From Malacoraja senta (lineage: Eukaryota): DNA of 64,000 nt. A program made the translations under genes and the position numbers. The stretch is from positions 56,544,001 through 56,608,000 of the forward strand of contig CM075977.1 in NCBI GenBank assembly GCA_038087875.1, read 5' to 3'. Positions 2,638-24,423 of the stretch are shown here, one piece after another. The notes under the pieces are model-generated. The model saw nothing but the letters and a program-made list of their open reading frames with translations. It was not told the DNA's origin and did not search any database. Position 1 is the stretch's first letter. Every line of letters starts with the position of its first letter.

Positions 2638-2735
2638 ACAACTTTGACTTTAGACTTTAGAGGGACAATTTATAGAAGCCAATTAACCGACAAACCTCTA
2701 GGTCTTTGGAGTGTGGGAGAAAACCGGAGCAACCG
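2638..2735 (-). mobile_element. V-SINE (HE1-like) fragment
   Basis: Matches the 3' half of the fuller SINE copies (agggacaattt...aagccaattaacc...tctttggagtgtgggag). Confidence 0.65.
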
Positions 2736-2740
2736 GTTAC

Positions 2741-2883
2741 TAGCCAGGGGCCACAGTTTAAGAATAAGGTGTAAGCAATTTAGAATGGAGATGAGGAAAC
2801 ACTTTATCACACAGAGAGTTGTGAGTCTGTGGAATTCTCTGCCTCGGAGGGCGGTGGAGGCCGGTTCTCTGGATACTTTCAAG
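2741..2883 (+). mobile_element. CR1/HER1-like LINE 3' fragment, left part (continues at 8466)
   Basis: RGHSLRI...FITQRVVSLWNSLP, the CR1 ORF2 C-terminus. The sequence resumes after the 2884-8465 insertion. Confidence 0.85.
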
Positions 2884-3159
2884 CAAAGATCATAGAGCGG
2901 AGCAAGATACTCCACTCCTGCGTAATCCAATGCACTAAGCTGTAGTACGTAACGGAGCTTAACAGCTGCCATCTTGGAATGCTCAACCCGACTTCCGTTA
3001 TGCCTCCTGCAGTGTCATCAGTAATGTAGGGGAACAGTATGTGTGTGATATTGCTCATCTATCAATTCACATATTTTAGTTAATTTTATTTTTAAATGTT
3101 TTCCCCCCTTAATCTATCTGTTTCTGCCCATTTCCCTCCCATCCTTCCTCCCCAGCGTA

Positions 3160-4740
3160 TCTATATTACTAAAAGTCTGATCTTAACCACTTCCTGTTGT
3201 TCTGTATATTAATGTTAGAAAAAATGCTGCCACTTACGGCTGCGATTTTTGGCCATTTTACTCAGAGTCCCCCTCCGATGCGCAGGACAAGAGGATTTTT
3301 CCCATCGATGAAAAATAAAAGAGTTATTAGTGTTTTAAAAATGTTGAGATTCTCTCTCCTGAAGGCCACGCACCTTCCAGAGGGACTATAAAACCCGGAA
3401 GTGTTGAGTGCCTCAGCCAGTCTCTGCAAGAAGGGGGAGCGAGAGGGTCACGTCTCTCAGTCTGAGCTGTGAATAACACTGAACACATGTCTACTAAACT
3501 GTGAGTGGTTTTACTGATCTGTCAGTGCCCTTAATGTGGTTTGAAACTATAGTTTGGAAATGCTAAAGCTGTGTTGACTTTGGTTTGGAAATGTAAAAGC
3601 TGTGTTGCCTTTGGTTTGGAAATTCTAAAGCTGTGTTGCGTTTGGTTTGGAAATGCTAAAGCTGTGTTGCCTTTGGTTTAGAAATGCTAAAGCTGTGTTG
3701 CCTTTGGTTTGGAAAAGCTAAAGCTGTGTTACCTTAGGTTTGGGAATGCTAAAACTGTGTTGCTTTTGGTTTGGAAAAGCTAAAGCTGTGTTGCCTTTGG
3801 TTTGGAAATGCTAAAGCTGTGTTGCCTTTGGTTTAGAAATGCTAAAGCTGTGTTGCCTTTGGTTTGGAAATGCTAAAGCTGTGTTGCCTTTGGTTTGGAA
3901 AGGCTAAAGCTGTGTTGCCTTTGGTTTGGAAAGGCTAAAGCTGTGTTGCCTTTGGTTTGGAAAGGCTAAAGCTGTGTTGCCTAATTAAAGTTGCCTTGCC
4001 TAATTAAAGTTGCCTTGCCTAATTAAAGTTGCCTTGCCTAATTAAGGTTGCCGTGCCTTCTATATAATTAAAAGTCTAATCTTGACCACTTCCTGTTTGC
4101 TCTATATATTGATTGTAGAAAAAACGCTACCACGTATGGCTGTGATTTTTGGCCATCTTACTCAGTCCCCCTCTGCTCATCAGGTGCCGAGGATGTTTCC
4201 CATCGATTAAAAATAAAAGAATTATTAGTGATTAAAAAATGTTGAGATTCTCTCTCCTGTCAATCACACCATGAAGGCCAGGCCCCTTCTGGTGGGAGGG
4301 GGAGGGACTATAAAACCCAGAAGTGTGGGCGTGGCCCAGTCTCTGCAAGATGGAGGAGGGAGAGGTCACGACTCGCTGTCTTTAGTGGCCTTGCACCCTG
4401 CTCGAAATGGTATGAAACTGCACTTGAATTTGGTGGCCTTGCACCCTGCTTGAAATGGAATTTCAAGGAATAGCCGTGAGTCAACTGCCAGCCCATCAGC
4501 CGTGAGTGAGTGAGCTGCCAGCACAACAGGCTTAAGTGACTGAGCTGCCAGCCCAAAAATCCATTCGGCCCACAATGTCCATATTAGCCCTCTGGAAACC
4601 AGTCCCTTCAGCCCACAACACCCATACTAGCACTCCAGAAAGCCCCCCCCCCCCCCCACTGGCCACCACTATAGGAATTGGTGGAGAGGTGGAATATTGC
4701 GTTGGGGGAGCCGCCCTCCCATGTGATGCTGGGACCCAAC
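3160..4740 (+). mobile_element. Non-autonomous Helitron with a duplicated 5' end and internal minisatellites; 3' end lies in the assembly gap
   Basis: Starts A|TCTATATTACTAAAAGTCTGATCTTAACCACTTCC, with a second copy of the 5' ~200 bp at 4059. The last bases GGGACCCAAC are the left arm and loop of the 3' hairpin seen complete in the 23149-24423 copy. Confidence 0.75.
3552..3981 (+). repeat. 31-bp minisatellite, about 14 copies, inside the Helitron
   Basis: Tandem unit GCTAAAGCTGTGTTGCCTTTGGTTTGGAAAT, followed by about 4 copies of TAATTAAAGTTGCCTTGCC (3982-4058). Confidence 0.95.
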
Positions 4741-4881
4741 NNNNNNNNNNNNNNNNNNNNNNNNNNNNNNNNNNNNNNNNNNNNNNNNNNNNNNNNNNNN
4801 NNNNNNNNNNNNNNNNNNNNNNNNNNNNNNNNNNNNNNNNNNNNNNNNNNNNNNNNNNNNNNNNNNNNNNNNNNNNNNNNN
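4741..4881. other. Assembly gap (run of N)
   Basis: Run of n characters. Confidence 1.
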
Positions 4882-5153
4882 AGAGATAAATAGATCTCAA
4901 AGTTCCTTCTCATGCATCAGAAGCAACTTTGATTTAAAAGCAACACTCTATTTCTCTCTTTATCTTGTTTGTCAGATGATGTACATAAACCATAAAGGCA
5001 TTTATATTTATAAATATATACATATAAATATATGCATATATATAAATATATTAATTCACAAATTTCAAATTCCTTAAAAAAAGTTGACAAGTACTTTAAT
5101 GGGTTCATGACTAACATAGTATCAACAGCAAATATTAAAAAAAAGATAGCATA

Positions 5154-5567
5154 AAATTAAATGTGGATTATGGAAATGTCGGAGACCCTACACCTGGAAA
5201 GAATCAGACTTGTCTTAATGGACAAACAAGAACTTTTTGTTAGAATATGGTCTCCATTCATTGACTATTTGAAGGGGTAAATCGGTTCGGCACGGGAACC
5301 TAACTGAAGCTTGCTTAGGATTAGATGAAAAGTTATACTCTATAATCTACGAACCTATCTCCAATGATGTATTATTAGTAAATCAATCCACTCTTTTTTT
5401 TTAATCTTGATATTTGTGGGTTTTTTTCTTTCTTTCTTACTTTCTATAAAAAAAAACTAGAAGCAGAATCAATCCACAATTGATAATATTAATAATGTAT
5501 GATTGATATACATGAAATGTTTTTACCATAATATGTTTTTGCTTCTAATAAAAATATTAATAAAAAT
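5154..5567 (+). mobile_element. 5'-truncated L1-clade LINE (ORF2 C-terminus and 3' UTR)
   Basis: 5161-5280 encodes MWIMEMSETLHLERIRLVLMDKQELFVRIWSPFIDYLKG*, a fish L1-type C-terminal motif. AATAAA and an A-rich tail follow. TSD AAAAAAAAGATAGCATA at 5137-5153 and 5568-5584. Confidence 0.75.
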
Positions 5568-5673
5568 AAAAAAAAGATAGCATATTGATGGCAAGTTTTC
5601 GAAAATGGCATCAGAATACACAAATACATTTTGTGTAACGGTTGTTGCGTGGTGTCCACCAGTGACCTGGTTG

Positions 5674-7065
5674 CAGGCACGTGCCGTGAGTAATTACTCA
5701 GGGTAGGTAGTCAGTCAGTCGGCTTTTTAAAAAATAACTTAAACCGCGCATGCGCAGATTGTTCTCTCCGTAAAAATAAAAATAAAAATAAAGACAGTAA
5801 CAATTCAATTTGCCAAAGGCTTCCAAGTCTCCTTGATTCTGAATTATTGAAAGGGTGTGGGGGTGAAGGGTGACGGCAGGTGGAGAGATGGTGGGAAAAA
5901 CGAGAGCACACAATTGTCATCTTATTGAATGACCACACTTGTTCAAGTGACCAATTGGGGGGAGAGTTCCTTTCACAGCGTGTGGAGAGTCTGACCAGGG
6001 GTAAAGTTGCGGGGAGGGCAGGAGTGTTGAGAAGGACGGGGTCAGGGATAATGGCAATAACTCACTCACTCCGGGCACGGAGCCACTGCAGCTTGGGCTG
6101 CGAGCGGCCGCCGGGACCGGACAGCAGAGCTAGCCACCACTTCAGCGCCTCCTGCCGGCCCGCTCACCTTTGGCAGTGCTCTCCGTTTGAACACCGCTCA
6201 CCTGCCGCTCGCCGCCTTCGCTCATGTCAGCCGCTTCCCGCAAATCCTTAAATTCCCACAGCCAAGTAACCTCAATCGTGCTGTCGGAATTTAAGGATTT
6301 GCGGGAAGCGGCTGACATGAGTGAGTCCAGCGAGCGGCAGGAGAGAGGTTTTCAGACGGAGAGATGCCAGAGGTGAGCGGGGGCCGGCAGAAGGAGCTGA
6401 GGTGGCAGCCGGTTCTGCTGTCCGGCCCGGTGGCCGCTCGCAGCCACCCTCCCCGACCACAATGCAGTGGCTCCATGCAAGGATCGTCGCAAGTGTGTTA
6501 CTGGCATGATCCCGATCCCCTCCTTCACAACGCTCCTGCCCTCCCCGCAACTTTACCCCGGGCCAGACTCCCCAAATGCTGTGAAAGGAACTCTCACTTT
6601 CCGGGCCCCACCCCAGGAAATACGGCATTTAAAATCATATAGCACCAAGAAATGTACTTACCACATTATCGGTACACAAACTCCATTCTTCTCTCTTTGT
6701 TTCTTAAAATACGCTTAAGATAATGGCAATCCATATTTGAAAAACCCGCTAAGAAACTAGCGCTGCGCATGCGCAGTAGGCTGCTGCGCCTGCGCAGTAC
6801 AGCAAAGGCAGAATTTCAGCTGCCTTCAGCCCCGCTTGTCATTGACGGCTCCAAGCAGCGCTGACGGCACGTGGGCTGCACAGACCTTCGCGTGTTGCAA
6901 GTGCTGCGGATGAAAGGCACGGAGAATTATGCCTACCTAAGAGATCGATCTCTTAGATAGGCATAATTCTCCCATGCCTTTACTATTTATATTTAGTAAT
7001 TACCATGTTATAATTTTAGTCAGGGTAGGCAGTGCCTATCTTGCCTACCCTGACGGCACTGCCTG
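5674..7065. mobile_element. Non-autonomous hAT-like fold-back DNA transposon
   Basis: Termini CAGGCACGTGCCGT and ACGGCAC-TGCCTG, 8-bp TSD CCTGGTTG (5666-5673 and 7066-7073). Long internal inverted repeat 5962-6262 / 6280-6595. Confidence 0.75.
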
Positions 7066-7503
7066 CCTGGTTGGCACAGTAAGTGCACATATTTCTTATT
7101 CCTTTCCATGTTTATGAATACCACATGGAACAATAAAATTGCAAACACCATTTCCACCATTGAACTGAGTGGACACCGCAATGCACGTTGCACGTTGCAC
7201 ATCATACACACAAATGCACACTAAATAAAATGTCCGTTTTGGTGGACCAGAAAATGAACGTTACATTATTAGCGAAAACCAAGCATTTTCACTGATGTGA
7301 TCTAACGGTACATTACCTTATGGATCTGAGCGCCATAGATGGCCGATGATTCATCAGAACATTTGATTTGGGCTGTTTTTTTGGTAAGTGAAATGTCTCC
7401 GTAACAGTCGTTGTGGAGCTTCCCGAAGTTAACACGAAGGAATGAAGTTGGCGAATTGAAGATTGGCTCAGTTTCTTGGTTTTGATGACCAATTTATGTC
7501 AAA

Positions 7504-7513
<10 letters not shown>

Positions 7514-7548
<35 letters not shown>
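7514..7548 (+). repeat. (CA)n microsatellite with (TA)n flanks
   Basis: Direct reading. Confidence 0.95.
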
Positions 7549-7551
<3 letters not shown>

Positions 7552-7981
7552 GTATATATATATACACACACATATATATATACGAAATCCTAATATTGTG
7601 AATAAAATATCCATGAACACATGTCAAGATATTTTTCCATTCTTTCATTCTATATTAGTGTAATACAATGTAGTGCATACATACCTACATAATTAAATTC
7701 AGCTGATAAGTTGGTCAAATAACATGGGGACCTTCTTGCTTTTTTTGAGACATTGATTTTTAAAATGTGAATCTCATAATGACACATTTGTGGGTCAGCA
7801 GTATATTAAACCAACCCCCTCAATTTCAAATAATTCTAAATTGAACTTCATTAACAAGGAAAACACTTTTTATTTCCGTCATTCATGGTGATATTTACAT
7901 AATTGACATCATTTTGTGTGCGAGATATACAGGGTTGCAGTGTTTCGCATATCAGCTAACCAATGAAAGTGATGTAAAATT

Positions 7982-8362
7982 GCGGTGTAGAAGATCTTGT
8001 CGACGAGTATTCTGGACTCACTGTCGACATCCGAAATTACAGAAAATATCATATAGGATTAACTAATAAGAAAAATTTGATTATAACTACATACCTGCAG
8101 AATGGATGATATACCACTTCAGTGCACTTGTTTTCAGTTGTGGGGAGACCTGTATATTGAAGATGCATTTTGCCTCTAATATGTCAATTTACCTTAAATG
8201 TAGAAGAGATTATTAAAATCTTCTTACATAGACCCTTTAAGTATTTTCTCACCTTTCTTTGTTATTGGGGAACCGGAAGAAAGACAGGTCGGGTCATCTA
8301 CATTGTCGATTACAGCAATTTATAGCAGAACAGTGAGCTGTAGATGTAGATGTGGCCGCCAT
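7982..8362 (-). pseudogene. Degenerate two-exon THAP zinc-finger N-terminus of a transposase
   Basis: 8362-8253 reads MAATSTSTAHCSAINCCNRQCR*PDLSFFRFPNNKE(R)|gtgag. From 8030 down it reads (R)CRQ*VQNTRRQDLLHR after a mutated acceptor (tttcgg). This fits the THAP pattern C-x4-C...FFRFP...RCxxW. Two in-frame stops. Confidence 0.75.
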
Positions 8363-8465
8363 GACAGTAGTCGAGGCAGCACATCAAAATGGTATGAAAA
8401 ATCACACATGACGTACTACGCTTTTTTCGCCAAGTGGAGTATCTTGATCCACTCTATGATCTTTG

Positions 8466-9050
8466 CTTTCAAGAGAGAGCTAGATAGGGCTCTTGAAGAT
8501 AGTGGAGTCAGGGAATATGGGGAGAAGGCAGGAATGGGGTCCTGATTGTGGATGATCAGCCATGATCACATTGAATGATGATGCTGGCTTGAAGGGCCGA
8601 ATGGCCTACTGCACAAGAGTCTATAGTCTATTGTCACCCAGAGAAAATTCGCTGGAGTTTAGAAGGATGAGAGGGAATCTTATAGAAACATATAAAATTC
8701 TTGGATTGGATAGGGTAGATGCAGGTAAAATGTTCACGATGTTGGGGGAGTCCAGAACCAGGGGTCACAGATTAAGGATAAAGGTAGGTCATTTAGGACT
8801 GAGATGAGGAAAAAAATTGTCACCCAGAGAGTTGTGAGTCTGTGGAATTCTCTGCCACAGAAGGCAGTGGAGGCCAATTCACTGGATGTTTTCAGGAGAG
8901 AGTTAGATTTAGCTCTTAGGACTAAGGGAATCAAGGGATATGGGGAAAAAGCCAGAACGGGGCACTGATTTTGGATGATGAGCTGTAATCATATTGAACG
9001 GCGGTGCTGGCTTGAAGGGCCGAATAGCCTTCTCCTGCACCTATTTTCTA
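8466..9050 (+). mobile_element. CR1/HER1-like 3' ends: the rest of the 2741 copy plus a second copy from about 8645
   Basis: FKRELDRAL and SLEFRRMRGNLIETYKIL...RTRGH motifs, with the GGGCCGAATGGCCT 3' stem-loop. Confidence 0.85.
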
Positions 9051-14630: not shown

Positions 14631-17526
14631 CAGTGCATTCAGAAAGTATTCAGACCCCTTCACTTTTTCCACATTTTGTTACGTTACAGCTTTATTTTTA
14701 AATGGATTAAATTTTTTTTTTTAATTATCAATCTACACACGATACCCCAGAATGAAGAAGCGAAAACAGGTGCTTAGAAATTTTTGCAAAGTAATTAAAA
14801 ATAAATAACTGAAATATCACATTTACATAAGTATTCAGACCCTTAGCTATGACACTCAAAATTGAGCCTAGGTTCATCTTATTTCCATTGATTATCCTTG
14901 AGATGTTTCTACAACTTGATTGGAGTCCACCAGTGGTAAATTAAATTGATTGGACATGATTTGGAAAGGCACACACCTGTCTATATAAGGTCCCACAGTT
15001 GACAGTGCATGTCAGAGCAAAAACCAAGCCATGAAGACGAAGGAATTGTCCGCAGATCTCCGAGACAGGATTGTGTCGAGACACAGATCTGGGGAAGGGT
15101 ATAAAACTATTTCTGCAGCATTGCAGGTCCCGAAGAGAACAGTGGCCTCCGCCATTCTTAAATGGAAGAACGTTGGAACCACCAGGACTCTTCATAGAGC
15201 TGTCCGCCCGGCTAAACTGAGCAATCGGGGGAGAAGGGCCTTGGTCCGGGAGGTGACCAAGAACCCGATGGTCACTCTGACAGAGCTCCAGAACTCTGTG
15301 GAGATGGGAGAACCTTCCAGAAGGACAACTATATCTGCCAAGCGTCATGTCAGGAGGAAACCAGGCACCGCTAATCACCTGGCCAATACCATACCTACAG
15401 TGAAGCATGGTGGTGGCAGCATCATGGTGTAGGGATGGTTTTCAGCGGCAGGAACTTGGAGACGAGTCAGGATCAAGGGAAACAGGAATGGAGCAAAGTA
15501 CAGAGAGATCCTTGATGAAAACTTGGTCCAGAGTATTCTGGATCTCAAACTGGGGCAGAGGTTCATCTTCCAACAGGACAACGACCTTAGCACACAGCTA
15601 AGACAACGTAGGAGTGGCTTCATGACAAATCTGTGAATGTCCTTGAGTGGCCCAGCCAGAGCCCGGACTTGAACCTGATCGAGCACTCTGGAGGGACCTG
15701 AAAATAGCTGTGCATCGACGCTCCCCATTCAACCTGACAGAGCTTGAGAGGAACTGCAGAGAAGAATGGGAGAAATTACCCAAATACAGGTGTGCCAAGC
15801 TTGTAGCGTCATACCCAAGAAGACTTGAGGCTGTAATCGCTGCCAAAGGTGCCTCAACAAAGTACTGAGTAAAGGGTCTGAATACTTATGTAAATGTGAT
15901 ATTTCAGTTATTTATTTTTAATTACTTTGCAAAAATTTCTAAATACCTGTATTTGCTTTATTATTATGGGGTTATCATCATCGGCGGTCACTCGAAACGA
16001 GTATGACTGTCCTCTCCATAAGAGTCGTCTACTTCTGGGTCTGCAGATGTCTGTCGAGGCCGATCCGCTCACCTTGGTACAACGTGGGCAGTGGAGACTG
16101 GCAGTGTTTGTCGTCGAGCCCCCTTCTCTCTCTCCTTACGGTGCTGTTGCTTTGTCTCTGCGACACGGCGTAGTTCCATTTCGTGACTTGCAGCTCCTTC
16201 CTGTACGGATTTCCTCCAGGAGCATCTGTCCAGTGCAATGTGCTCCCAGTTGCTCGATGTGATGTGGAATTTCTTCAGACTTCTTGATGTTGTCCTTGAA
16301 GCATTTCTTTGGCCCGCCGGGGGCTCGCCGACCTTCCTTAAATTGAGAGTACAGGATTTGTTTACGGAGGCGTGTGTTGGAAATGTGGAAGACATGGCCA
16401 GTCCATTGAAGTTGGTGCTGCATTATTGTGGTGATTTATCTGGTCATGTTGGCTTCCTCCAAAACGCTGATGTTGGTGTGTTTGTCCTCCCAGCTGATCC
16501 TCAGAATCTTTCGTAAGGATCTTTGATGATATTGTTCCAGGGCAGCAGACATGATATTCACCGCACGACAACTCCAGGAAAAATGCCGTGAACAATGGTA
16601 GCCTTTGTACATGGCCTTCATAGACCTGACAAAGGCTTTTGACTCGGTAGACCGCCATGCTCTTTGGAGCATACTATCAAGGTATGGTTGCCATTACAAG
16701 TACATCAGAATATTGAGGCTTCTACATGATGGCATGTCGGTCACAGTGCTCAGCAACTGCGGCTCTGAGTCTGAGCCCTTCACTGTGGGAACGGGGGTCA
16801 AACAGGGATGCATCATCGCACCCACCCTGTTTGTCGTCTTCATTGCTGCCATACTTCACCTCATTGGTGAAGCGCTGCCACAGGGGATTCCAATCCTCTA
16901 CAGAACTGACGGTGGTCTCTTCAACCTTAATAGGTTGAAGGCCAAGAGCAAAGTCAGTTACACCGCCATCATGGAGCTTCAGTACATGGACGACTGTGCC
17001 ATTGCAGCACACTATGCAGAAGACATCCAGGGCATCCTGAATGCCTTTGCCAAGGCATACAGAGCCATGGGCCTAGCCTTAAATATCAAGAAGACCCAGG
17101 TCCTACATCAACCTCCACCCAACCAGCCGTCTACCCAGCCAACTATAAAAGTGGACACCACTCTTGAAAATGTTGACCACTTCCCCTACCTTGGCAGCAT
17201 TCTTTCCTCAAAAGCTGATATTGACTCTGAGGTCAACCATTGCCAGCGGAGCCTACGCCAGCCTCAGGAAAAGAATCTTTGAAGACCGAGACCTAAAGGC
17301 TCAAACAAAACTGCTGGTCCACAGAGCCGTTGTCCTCTCCACCCTGTTGTATGGAGCCGAGTCATGGACCACCTACAGCAGGCACCTGAGAGCCCTGGAA
17401 CAATTATGGGGTATTCTGTGTAGATTGATGACAAAACAAAATGATTTTAATCAATTTTAGAATAAGGCCTTAATGTAACAAAATGTGGGAAAGATGAAGG
17501 GGTCTAAATACTTTCTGAATGCACTG
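14631..17526 (+). mobile_element. Defective Tc1-like (IR/DR type) transposon, interrupted by an RTE
   Basis: TA|CAGTGCATTCAGAAAGTATT...AATACTTTCTGAATGCACTG|TA. Inner DRs near 14826 and 15872. Transposase remnant 15031-15868 (MKTKELSADLRDRIV...GEGYKTIS; VKHGGGSIMV; QQDND; WPSQSPDLN) with a deletion, stops and frameshifts. Confidence 0.92.
15973..17402 (-). mobile_element. RTE-clade LINE, 5'-truncated, with an inverted 5' segment
   Basis: TSD ATTATGGGGT (15963-15972 and 17403-17412). The 3' part is on the minus strand (15973-16543; ALEQYHQRSLRKILRISWED, (TGA)n tail). The RT part is on the plus strand (16544-17402; AFIDLTKAFDSV, GVKQGCIIAP, QYMDDC). Confidence 0.88.
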
Positions 17527-23148: not shown

Positions 23149-24423
23149 CTAGACTAAGTGGGACCCGTTGGGTCCCAGTCACATGGGAGGTCTGGTCCCC
23201 CAATGCAACCCATTCCCCAATGCAATATTCCACCACTCACCTGTTCCCCCAACGCAATGGCAGGAGCGTTCTGTAGCCGGGGGATGGGAATGGCTTCAGG
23301 CAGGAAGCGTCCTGCAGCCAGGGGAGGGGGACGGCTTCAGGCGGGGCATGTAGGGTGTGGGGGAGGGGGGCTGTGTGGGGGAGGGTGTGTGTGGGGGGGG
23401 GGGGTGTGTGTGGGGGGGAGGGTGTGTGGGGGTAGGGGAGGGGGTGTATGTGGAATGGGGAGGGGTGTTGATGGTAGGGGTATGTGGGGTAGGGGGTGTG
23501 GGGAGGGGGTGTGTGGGGGAGGGGGTGTGGGGGGAGGGGGTTTGTGGGGGACGGTGTGTGTGGGGGAGGGGGTGTATGTGGGGGGGAGGGGTGTGGGTGG
23601 AGTGGGGGAGGGGTGTGTGGGAGAGGGGGTGTGGGGGAGAGGTGGTGTAGGGGAGGGTGGGGTGTTGGGGAGGGGGTTGTGGGGGAAGGGGTGTGTGTGG
23701 GGGAGGGGGTGTGGGGGAGGTGTTGTGGGGGAGGGAGTGTGTAGTGGAGGGGGGTGTCGGGGAGGGGGGAGGGTGTCGGGGTGGGGGAGTGTGGGAGGGG
23801 GGTTGTTGGATGGAGGTGTGTGGGCTCACCTGTTCCCGGCTCCAGCTCCGACTGCACTCCCTGCTCCAGGACCCGGCTCCGGACTCACTCAGCTGCTCCC
23901 GTCCCCAGCGCCTGTCGCGCTCACAGCCCCCGCCCGCACCCGCGGACACAGCCCGCCCTCACCCACGAGCACAGCCCGCCCCCGCCCGTGAACACAGCCC
24001 GCCCCCGCCCGCGAACACAGCCTGCTCCCGCCCGCGAACACAGCCCGCCTCCGCCCGCGGACCACAGCCCACACTCCGCTGCTTCAGCTTTATTCTCGGC
24101 GGCTTGTGGACGGGCGGCTTCTAAACGTGCTCACGGACTCAGCCCTGCCTCCGGGGATTTATTCTTCAGCGGGTGCCGGAAGGGTCGTTACCTTCATGGA
24201 GAATGACAGGCGAGAAGACCAATCTGCTGATCTCACGATTTTGTAAACCTTCATAACTTTTGTAATCTTCCACCGATCGGAACAAAACTTGGTGCGCTTG
24301 GAGCAGAGGAGAACGGTGAGTAAGGTGGCGAGTAATCCTAGCGATATAGGGTGGCGTTTTTGCTCAAATTTAAAAACATCGCAGACCGGAAGTGGTCAAG
24401 ATGAGAGTTTTAGTAATAGTAGA
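23149..24423 (-). mobile_element. Complete non-autonomous Helitron
   Basis: The minus strand starts TCTACTATTACTAAAACTCTCATCTTGACCACTTCC. It ends with an 8-bp-stem hairpin TGGGACCC-AAC-GGGTCCCA (23159-23177) followed by CTTAGTCTAG. No TSD. The interior is a G-rich tract plus a ~23-bp minisatellite. Confidence 0.8.
23340..24075 (+). repeat. G-rich low-complexity tract (23340-23820) and CACAGCCCGCCCCCGCCCGCGAA minisatellite (23920-24075)
   Basis: Direct reading. Confidence 0.9.

What the first reader, a model, noticed from the sequence alone, without database searches (positions are those of the whole stretch)
2884..8465. P-element-like THAP transposon in a cartilaginous fish, forming a nest of five element classes
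Seen: 33-bp TIRs starting CAAAG (31/33 identical), a perfect 8-bp TSD, and a subterminal inverted motif GTAGTACGT (2942-2950 and 8411-8419). The host CR1 reads through once the element is removed. Inside it are a Helitron (3160), an L1 with TSD (5154), a fold-back hAT with TSD (5674) and a THAP remnant. Established: ~31-bp TIRs, an 8-bp TSD and an N-terminal THAP domain typify P elements, which in vertebrates are known mostly from zebrafish elements and domesticated THAP9. THAP12/PRKRIR-related hATs also combine THAP with 8-bp TSDs. Inference: a THAP transposon family was mobile after this CR1 subfamily. The ORF track does not show this element at all.
Basis: partly seen in the sequence, partly recalled or inferred. 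Interest (0 to 1): 0.75.

Follow-up and report, generated by a model that had tools for sequence, protein, structure and literature searches.

The report
Dead THAP-bearing transposon nested in CR1
This is one old, broken, non-autonomous copy of a multi-copy cut-and-paste DNA transposon that landed in a CR1 retroelement and was later hit by other mobile elements; it is probably P-element-like, but that could not be shown, so it is an ordinary though tidy transposon nest.

Summary
The structure is real and sits at the stated coordinates. It has 33-bp TIRs that match at 31 of 33 positions (2884-2916 and 8433-8465). It has a perfect 8-bp TSD, CTTTCAAG. The host CR1 3' end reads straight through once the insert is removed.

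Public contigs from four coded organisms show that the backbone is multi-copy. Other copies lack the nested hAT-like fold-back precisely, and one lacks the L1-type insert. One copy ends exactly at 8465.

New here: the two ends share inverted similarity beyond the TIR, for about 120 bp, up to an ATG.

The THAP remnant lies on the minus strand (8362 to about 8095). It is plausible but below Pfam's threshold (E 5.7e-4 to 0.005). No transposase catalytic domain survives in this copy.

No autonomous partner could be reached with these tools, so P versus hAT is unresolved. My odds are about 0.55 P, 0.25 hAT.

The "Helitron" has a credible 5' end only. Its 3' end lies at or beyond the assembly gap (4741-4881), which I did not read across.

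The closest precedent is medaka Izanagi, a non-autonomous element with an 8-bp TSD and a degenerate three-exon THAP. The scan's unchecked notes report similar THAP/P-like elements elsewhere in this genome.

The parts
2700..2883 (+). Left part of the host CR1-type 3' fragment. It encodes the ORF2 C-terminal motif ..FITQRVVSLWNSLPRRAVEAGSLDTFK. The last 8 bases (2876-2883) are TSD copy 1, CTTTCAAG.
   Evidence: the CR1 motif is recognised from general knowledge of CR1 ORF2 tails
2884..2916 (+). Left 33-bp TIR, beginning CAAAGATCATAGAG
2917..3002 (+). Left subterminal region. It is imperfectly inverted relative to 8360-8432 and includes GTAGTACGT (2942-2950), a GCCATCTTG motif and an ATG.
   Evidence: score 17 against 7.5 +/- 1.4 in shuffles, 0 of 1000 shuffles reach it
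3160..4740 (+). Helitron-like insert. Two head-to-tail units start at 3160 and 4059 and share about 300 bp of 5' sequence. Unit 1 carries a 31-bp minisatellite (about 3459-4073). The 3' end is not visible.
4741..4881 (.). Assembly gap (N). It was not read or filled, and continuity across it is untested.
4882..5153 (-). Internal backbone, multi-copy in four runs
   Evidence: depth, 27-56 contigs at variable sites, joint 5142->5602
5154..5566 (+). Nested L1-type retroposed fragment with an AATAAA signal and an A-tail. Its 18-bp TSD TAAAAAAAAGATAGCATA lies at 5136-5153 and 5567-5584.
5674..7065 (.). Nested hAT-like fold-back MITE. Its ends read CAGGCA(C)GTGCCG, its internal inverted arms are about 300 bp, and its TSD CCTGGTTG lies at 5666-5673 and 7066-7073.
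   Evidence: joints that skip 1400 bases with 8 shared letters
7074..8252 (-). Right-hand backbone: non-coding or decayed, with a (CA)n/(TA)n stretch at about 7500-7575. It includes candidate THAP exon 2 (8149-8095, ..LKTSALKWYIIHSAG, donor GTATGT).
8253..8362 (-). Candidate THAP exon 1. It runs from the ATG at 8362-8360 through ..HCSAINCCNRQCR, an in-frame stop at 8296-8294, then PDLSFFRFPNNKE. The donor AG|GTGAGA has its GT at 8252-8251.
8360..8432 (-). Right subterminal region, the counterpart of 2917-3002. It contains ACGTACTAC at 8411-8419.
8433..8465 (-). Right 33-bp TIR
   Evidence: a contig from run X3 ends exactly at 8465 with an unlike flank (record 31)
8466..8650 (+). TSD copy 2 (8466-8473) and the rest of the host CR1-type 3' end

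Best explanation
This is a dead, non-autonomous copy of an old multi-copy cut-and-paste transposon family. About 2 kb of its own sequence survives, in a span of about 5.6 kb.

Shown: a transposase making 8-bp staggered target cuts inserted it into the ORF2 tail of a CR1 copy. A hAT-like fold-back MITE, an L1-type retroposed fragment and a Helitron-like array later inserted into it.

Inferred:
- The element's 5' end is the right end. About 100 bp inside that TIR it keeps the decayed, intron-split first exons of a THAP zinc-finger domain, the usual N-terminus of the family's own transposase.
- The family belongs to the P superfamily (relatives of Drosophila P, zebrafish Pdre and THAP9). It was moved in trans by a THAP-bearing P-type transposase that recognised subterminal sites, with the inverted GTAGTACGT block as a candidate.
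For: - TIRs, TSD and empty-site read-through.
- Multi-copy family in four coded organisms: 15-56 distinct contigs at variable sites, most 85-95% alike. Summed depth rises towards the terminus, as expected for a family rich in internal-deletion derivatives. One contig ends exactly at 8465.
- Nested inserts are absent from other copies.
- THAP is the only Pfam family hit (E 5.7e-4 to 0.005). THAP1 is the top PDB match, with CSAxxCxNR...SFxxFP aligned.
- At 8018 nearly all other copies read the base that turns this copy's TGA into TGG. At 8120 and 8275 their differences are synonymous in the proposed frame.
- A 33-bp TIR, an 8-bp TSD and inverted subterminal repeats match the P layout. Pdre2 has 13-bp TIRs, 12-bp subterminal repeats and an 8-bp TSD (PMC10983969). 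Medaka Izanagi is non-autonomous, with an 8-bp TSD and a degenerate three-exon THAP (PMC2820524).
- The TSD has no central TA. From memory, THAP-bearing hAT-Buster elements prefer one; I did not check this here.
Against: - No transposase catalytic domain of any kind is present in this copy.
- No autonomous relative was recovered.
- The THAP score is below Pfam's cut-off, and I chose the exon joins by eye. No C-X2-H half was found.
- Exon 1 (phase 2) and candidate exon 2 are out of frame in this copy, and a common +2 variant in other copies does not fix this.
- CAAAG and an 8-bp TSD fit hAT equally well. CTTTCAAG even fits the Ac-type pattern nTnnnnAn.
- THAP also occurs in transposases that are not P-type (PMC10027918).
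Confidence: 0.55

Rival explanations
1. It is a non-autonomous hAT element, for example of the Buster/THAP12-like branch whose transposases begin with THAP. A hAT transposase would have moved it. hAT transposases also make 8-bp TSDs and recognise ends of the form 5'-YARNG.
For: The 8-bp TSD and the CAAAG terminus fit hAT, and the TSD fits nTnnnnAn. hAT families are far more numerous in fish than P families, and a hAT-like MITE is nested right here. Earlier scan notes report several hAT transposases in this genome (unchecked).
Against: A 33-bp near-perfect TIR is long for a hAT. No BED or hAT dimerisation remnant is present. The TSD lacks the central TA typical of Buster, the hAT branch I recall as carrying THAP (from memory). 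This is only one site.
Confidence: 0.25
2. The THAP-like exons are not the element's own transposase. They would be a captured host gene start (promoter, first exon, donor) carried by a Pack-type TIR element of unknown superfamily. Earlier scan notes describe such captures for other genes in this genome.
For: The layout matches: an ATG about 100 bp inside one TIR, a first exon and a splice donor. Unchecked notes report TDP2, CYB561D2, ZFP36 and BCL7 first-exon captures in 8-bp-TSD elements of this genome.
Against: The inverted similarity of the two arms runs right up to the ATG, so the leader is element sequence and not cargo. Several independent notes describe THAP exons in TIR elements of this genome (unchecked). 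THAP is the classic transposase N-terminus.
Confidence: 0.12
3. The THAP similarity is chance. The element is simply an unclassifiable 8-bp-TSD MITE-like element with non-coding internal sequence.
For: The score is below threshold. The single pieces hit nothing. I chose the pieces after inspecting many frames. The protein database returned no relatives.
Against: The CSAxxCxNR...SFxxFP string starts at an ATG and ends at a consensus donor. The next candidate exon carries the expected Trp. Differences from other copies are synonymous or remove a stop.
Confidence: 0.08

Closest known systems
Izanagi, a non-autonomous P-like element of medaka (Herpin et al. 2010, PMC2820524)
   Same: It is non-autonomous and multi-copy, with an 8-bp TSD and TIRs. 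It carries a degenerate THAP domain split over about three exons, has no transposase body, and was itself interrupted by another repeat.
   Different: The host lineage differs (a teleost against a skate). The THAP sequences are alike only in the generic motifs. Izanagi's P label rests on the same thin evidence, so the likeness does not prove P membership.
Zebrafish Pdre2 / THAP9 and Drosophila P element
   Same: They have an 8-bp TSD, TIRs plus subterminal inverted repeats, an N-terminal THAP, and many internally deleted copies (PMC10983969). Drosophila P has 31-bp TIRs (general knowledge).
   Different: Pdre2's TIRs are 13 bp and unrelated in sequence. Those elements have a demonstrated P transposase, and none is seen here.
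THAP-bearing hAT elements (Buster / THAP12-PRKRIR lineage)
   Same: They have an 8-bp TSD, a YARNG-type terminus and a THAP N-terminus.
   Different: I recall that Buster sites favour nnnTAnnn and shorter TIRs. No hAT domain remnant is present here.

Membership tests
P superfamily | Transposase with a P-type RNase H-like catalytic domain and GTP-binding insertion (Pfam Tnp_P_element and partners) | tested here: inconclusive
   None of the ten longest stop-free backbone pieces hit such a domain. No autonomous copy could be retrieved. Absence is expected in a deletion derivative.
P superfamily | N-terminal THAP DNA-binding domain | tested here: inconclusive
   Pfam THAP scores E 0.005 to 5.7e-4 and 18-21 bits against a 23.9-bit cut-off. 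The best PDB match is THAP1 at E 0.35. The C-X2-H half was not found.
P superfamily | 7-8-bp TSD | tested here: met
   CTTTCAAG is present twice. The host repeat has it once.
P superfamily | TIRs with subterminal inverted repeats | tested here: met
   A 33-bp TIR matching at 31/33, with inverted similarity extending to about 120 bp.
P superfamily | Excision leaves stubs of both TIRs, from staggered cuts inside the TIR | not testable with these tools
   There are no further TIR-stub matches in the window. Scan notes of such scars are unchecked and are not linked to this TIR.
hAT superfamily | 8-bp TSD and a 5'-YARNG terminus | tested here: met
   The terminus is CAAAG and the TSD is 8 bp. Izanagi's authors quote this same YARNG motif as the P-superfamily consensus, so it does not discriminate.
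hAT superfamily | Transposase with BED or THAP plus a hAT dimerisation domain | tested here: inconclusive
   No such domain is present in this copy. No autonomous partner was found.
hAT-Buster (THAP-bearing branch) | TSD preference nnnTAnnn | tested here: not met
   The TSD centre is TC. This is a single site, so the evidence is weak.
Helitron (nested element at 3160) | 5'-TC start after a host A, and a 3' hairpin plus CTRR before a host T | tested here: inconclusive
   The 5' TC follows an A at 3159/3160. Related 5' ends lie at 4059 and about 24423 (-). The 3' end is not visible; it lies at or beyond the gap.
L1-type retroposition (nested element at 5154) | Long TSD at an A-rich target, a poly(A) tail and a polyadenylation signal | tested here: met
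   An 18-bp TSD, an AATAAA signal and an A-run, plus a copy without the insert. The 39-aa ORF tail has no Pfam hit, so 'L1' is inferred from the insertion signature only.

The most novel reading that the evidence does not exclude
Skates carry a large, formerly very active P-superfamily transposon family. It would have 33-bp TIRs, about 120-bp inverted subterminal regions that include the leader up to the ATG, and an intron-split THAP. It would be shared by several species, making it the first documented mobile P family in cartilaginous fishes. The inverted GTAGTACGT block would be its THAP-binding site.
Probability: 0.45. Interest if true: 0.45.

Novelty: new member of a known kind. Interest (0 to 1): 0.3.

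Why it matters
In the papers I read, mobile P-type elements in vertebrates are documented for zebrafish (Pdre) and medaka (Izanagi). Elsewhere only the domesticated THAP9 remains. If this family is P-type, then P elements were abundant and mobile in cartilaginous fishes after the CR1 expansion. That would help date when vertebrate lineages lost or tamed P elements, and it would offer natural ends for testing THAP9-like transposases. As it stands, the copy is a dead non-autonomous element with no sign of function. Its main use is as a clean relative-age marker: CR1, then the THAP element, then the hAT MITE, the L1-type insert and the Helitron-like insert.

Tried and rejected
- Protein search with the THAP exons, with X at the breaks (57 aa), and with the longest antisense ORF over the same DNA (87 aa). 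No candidates came back. The length filter (0.55-1.75x) means this says nothing about full-length transposases. I left the third search unused, because it would repeat the same words over a slightly wider length range.
- Exact-pattern scan of metagenome contigs for the TIR: 0 hits, as expected.
- Search for further TIRs or TIR stubs in the window: none. BLAST of every backbone segment against the window gave no other copy.
- Pfam on ten backbone pieces and on the long window ORFs: only LINE reverse transcriptases elsewhere in the window.
- Left-arm 'MPP..CSVISN' as a second, inward-facing THAP start: DNA similarity after the ATG is not above chance and Pfam finds nothing. I rejected it as evidence and keep it only as a hint.
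- Third THAP exon: two candidate frames near 7955-8029 were examined. Neither joins in phase nor extends the Pfam match.
- The search of protein representatives could not be used, because the longest stop-free THAP piece is 29 aa, under the 30-aa minimum.
- Orthologous empty or filled site in relatives: not decidable. No run showed a long, near-identical contig of this locus.
- I deliberately did not lay reads on 2700-4881, to avoid reading the assembly gap. The left arm's copy number is therefore untested.
Full report
**Observation**

- The ends 2884-2916 and 8433-8465 are inverted repeats that agree at 31 of 33 positions. They are the only matches in the 64-kb window, with none expected by chance.
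- They are flanked by identical CTTTCAAG octamers at 2876-2883 and 8466-8473.
- I joined 2500-2883 to 8474-8900 to rebuild the empty site. It aligns without interruption, at about 80% identity, to three other copies of the same repeat in the window (near 8.8, 25.1 and 57.7 kb). Each of these has a single xTTTCAAG at that point.
- The host repeat encodes ..FITQRVVSLWNSLPRRAVEAGSLDTFK|RELDRAL. I recognise this from general knowledge as the C-terminal motif of CR1-clade ORF2, so the insertion sits in a 5'-truncated CR1 tail.
- Hundreds of loose ends in each of four public runs give the same read-through sequence..GGCCGGTTCTCTGGATA before CTTTCAAG.

**Assembly gap**

Positions 4741-4881 are N. Following the operators' note, I did not lay reads on them or infer their letters from other copies. 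Continuity is therefore untested, and the element's length is only an estimate.
- Nothing in my reading crosses the gap.
- The mechanical ORFs 4532-4900 (-) and 4536-4889 (+) run through the N stretch and are artefacts.
- Correctly oriented TIRs, identical TSDs and a host repeat that reads through lie on opposite sides of the gap. This argues that the scaffold join is right.

**Family evidence**

I laid Logan contigs of four runs, from four coded organisms, on 4882-8700 at 80% or higher likeness.
- The backbone (4882-5137, 5585-5665 and 7074-8465) is covered by many distinct contigs. There are 15-56 at individual variable sites, and most are 85-95% alike.
- Summed depth rises about ten-fold from the interior (7186-7313) to the terminal bin (8338-8465). 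This is the pattern expected when many copies are internal-deletion derivatives. These depths are not copy numbers.
- One contig (run X3, record 31) stops aligning exactly at 8465 and continues for 80 letters unlike the CR1 flank. It is therefore an independent copy with the same terminus.
Other TIR-ended copies exist, but their TSDs could not be seen.

**Nested elements**

- *hAT-like fold-back (5674-7065).* It has CAGGCA(C)GTGCCG ends, internal arms of about 300 bp and a perfect CCTGGTTG TSD. In three runs, 18 contigs join 5665 to 7066, skipping 1400 bases with 8 shared letters. This is the exact empty site in other copies of the backbone.
- *L1-type insert (5154-5566).* It has an 18-bp TSD at an A-rich target, an AATAAA signal and an A-tail. 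One contig lacks it. Its short ORF tail has no Pfam hit, so 'L1' rests on the insertion signature alone.
- *'Helitron'.* It consists of two head-to-tail units (3160 and 4059) that share about 300 bp. Each begins TCTATAT.A.TAAAAGTCT, and the first directly follows an A. Unit 1 carries a 31-bp minisatellite. A related 5' end lies near 24423 on the minus strand. No 3' hairpin or CTRR end is visible, and the right junction lies at or beyond the gap, so this label is plausible but unverified.

**Coding remnant**

The remnant lies on the minus strand.
- An ATG at 8362 opens MAATSTSTAHCSAINCCNRQCR, followed by an in-frame stop, then PDLSFFRFPNNKE. A consensus donor follows (AG|GTGAGA, with GT at 8252-8251).
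- A candidate second exon (8149-8095) reads ..LKTSALKWYIIHSAG and ends at a GTATGT donor.
- Read through with X at the breaks, Pfam returns only THAP, at E 0.005 to 5.7e-4 and 18-21 bits, under the 23.9-bit cut-off.
- The best PDB match is THAP1, aligning CSAxxCxNR...SFxxFP. The individual stop-free pieces hit nothing.
- Differences seen in nearly all other copies fit coding ancestry. At 8275 and 8120 they are synonymous in the proposed frames. At 8018 they turn a TGA of this copy into TGG.
- Against this, exon 1 ends in phase 2 and does not join candidate exon 2 in frame. A frequent +2 variant in other copies does not repair that. I found no convincing C-X2-H half.
- I therefore rate the THAP remnant as probable, not established.
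- Ten further backbone pieces show no transposase domain. The copy is non-autonomous.

**New detail**

The arms resemble each other in inverted orientation beyond the TIR, up to an ATG on each side.
- For 2917-3002 against rc(8360-8432), the local score is 17 against 7.5 +/- 1.4 in shuffles, and 0 of 1000 shuffles reach it. After the ATG there is no excess similarity.
A GCCATCTTG / ACCATTTTG block is another.
- So both ends look like 5' ends. This echoes unchecked scan notes of fold-back elements with two inward-facing THAP exons in this genome.

**Classification**

CAAAG and an 8-bp TSD fit both superfamilies. The motif 5'-YARNG, which I know as the hAT convention, is quoted by Izanagi's authors as the P-superfamily consensus.

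Deciding between them needs the transposase, and I could not reach one.
- Two protein searches returned no candidates within the length filter.
- A metagenome scan for the TIR found nothing.
- The window holds no other copy.
- No genome-wide DNA search of this species was available.

Indirect points favour P:
- the long, near-perfect TIR;
- the subterminal inverted repeats;
- a THAP start about 100 bp inside one end;
- no central TA in the TSD;
- unchecked notes of an intron-containing P-like gene and of P-type scars in this genome.

hAT families are much more numerous, and some carry THAP. THAP also travels with other transposase types (PMC10027918). I put P at about 0.55, hAT at about 0.25, captured host exon at about 0.12 and chance THAP at about 0.08.

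**Comparison with what is known**

- Medaka Izanagi (PMC2820524) is the closest match in kind. It is a multi-copy, non-autonomous element with an 8-bp TSD and a degenerate THAP domain in three putative exons, and it was itself split by another repeat. It was called P on the same circumstantial grounds.
- Zebrafish Pdre2 (PMC10983969) shows the authentic P layout in a vertebrate: 13-bp TIRs, 12-bp subterminal inverted repeats and an 8-bp TSD.
- This element is therefore a new member of a known kind, in a lineage where I found no published report. My literature search was limited.

**Verdict**

This is a real, well-delimited and correctly dissected transposon nest. The order of events was CR1, then the THAP-bearing TIR element, then the hAT MITE, the L1-type insert and the Helitron-like array. 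The P label is the best guess but is unproven, and there is no evidence of present function. Interest is modest.

The scan had already noted similar THAP/P-like elements on other DNA of this genome (s1-191409, s1-187657, s1-140616). All are unchecked first-reader notes.

Noticed in passing
window 4532-4900 (-) and 4536-4889 (+): Two ORFs of more than 110 aa in the mechanical ORF list run straight through the N gap (4741-4881). They are artefacts of translating N.
   Followed up: yes
window 3459-4073: A 31-bp minisatellite of about 14 or more units, followed by a short repeat (gcctaattaaagttgccttgcc x3-4), lies inside the first Helitron-like unit.
   Followed up: partly
window 24176-24423 (-) and 23167-23247 (-): Another copy of the Helitron-like family, with 5' end TCTACTATTACTAAAAC.., is colinear with 4059-4292 and 4674-4740. 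I did not use it to infer the gap.
   Followed up: partly
window 5674-7065: The nested hAT-like fold-back belongs to an extremely abundant family in all four runs. Its summed word depth is 10-100 times that of the THAP-element backbone.
   Followed up: partly
window 8242-8493 (run X1, record 7): One 286-nt contig, about 86% alike, crosses the right TIR end and runs 28 nt into the CR1 flank. It may be a second insertion at the same CR1 site, a duplicated composite, or an alignment artefact.
   Followed up: no
window 2972-2984 and 8383-8393: A YY1-like GCCATCTTG / ACCATTTTG block sits in the inverted subterminal region of both arms, upstream of each ATG. It may be part of the element's promoter.
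   Followed up: no
window 16605-17279 (+) and 35288-36220 (+): LINE reverse-transcriptase ORFs (RVT_1, E 8e-20 and 2e-23). The second also matches ALKBH8_N.
   Followed up: partly
window 7349-7447: Some other copies (one contig each in runs X15 and X2) skip 97 bases here. This is an indel polymorphism within the family backbone.
   Followed up: no
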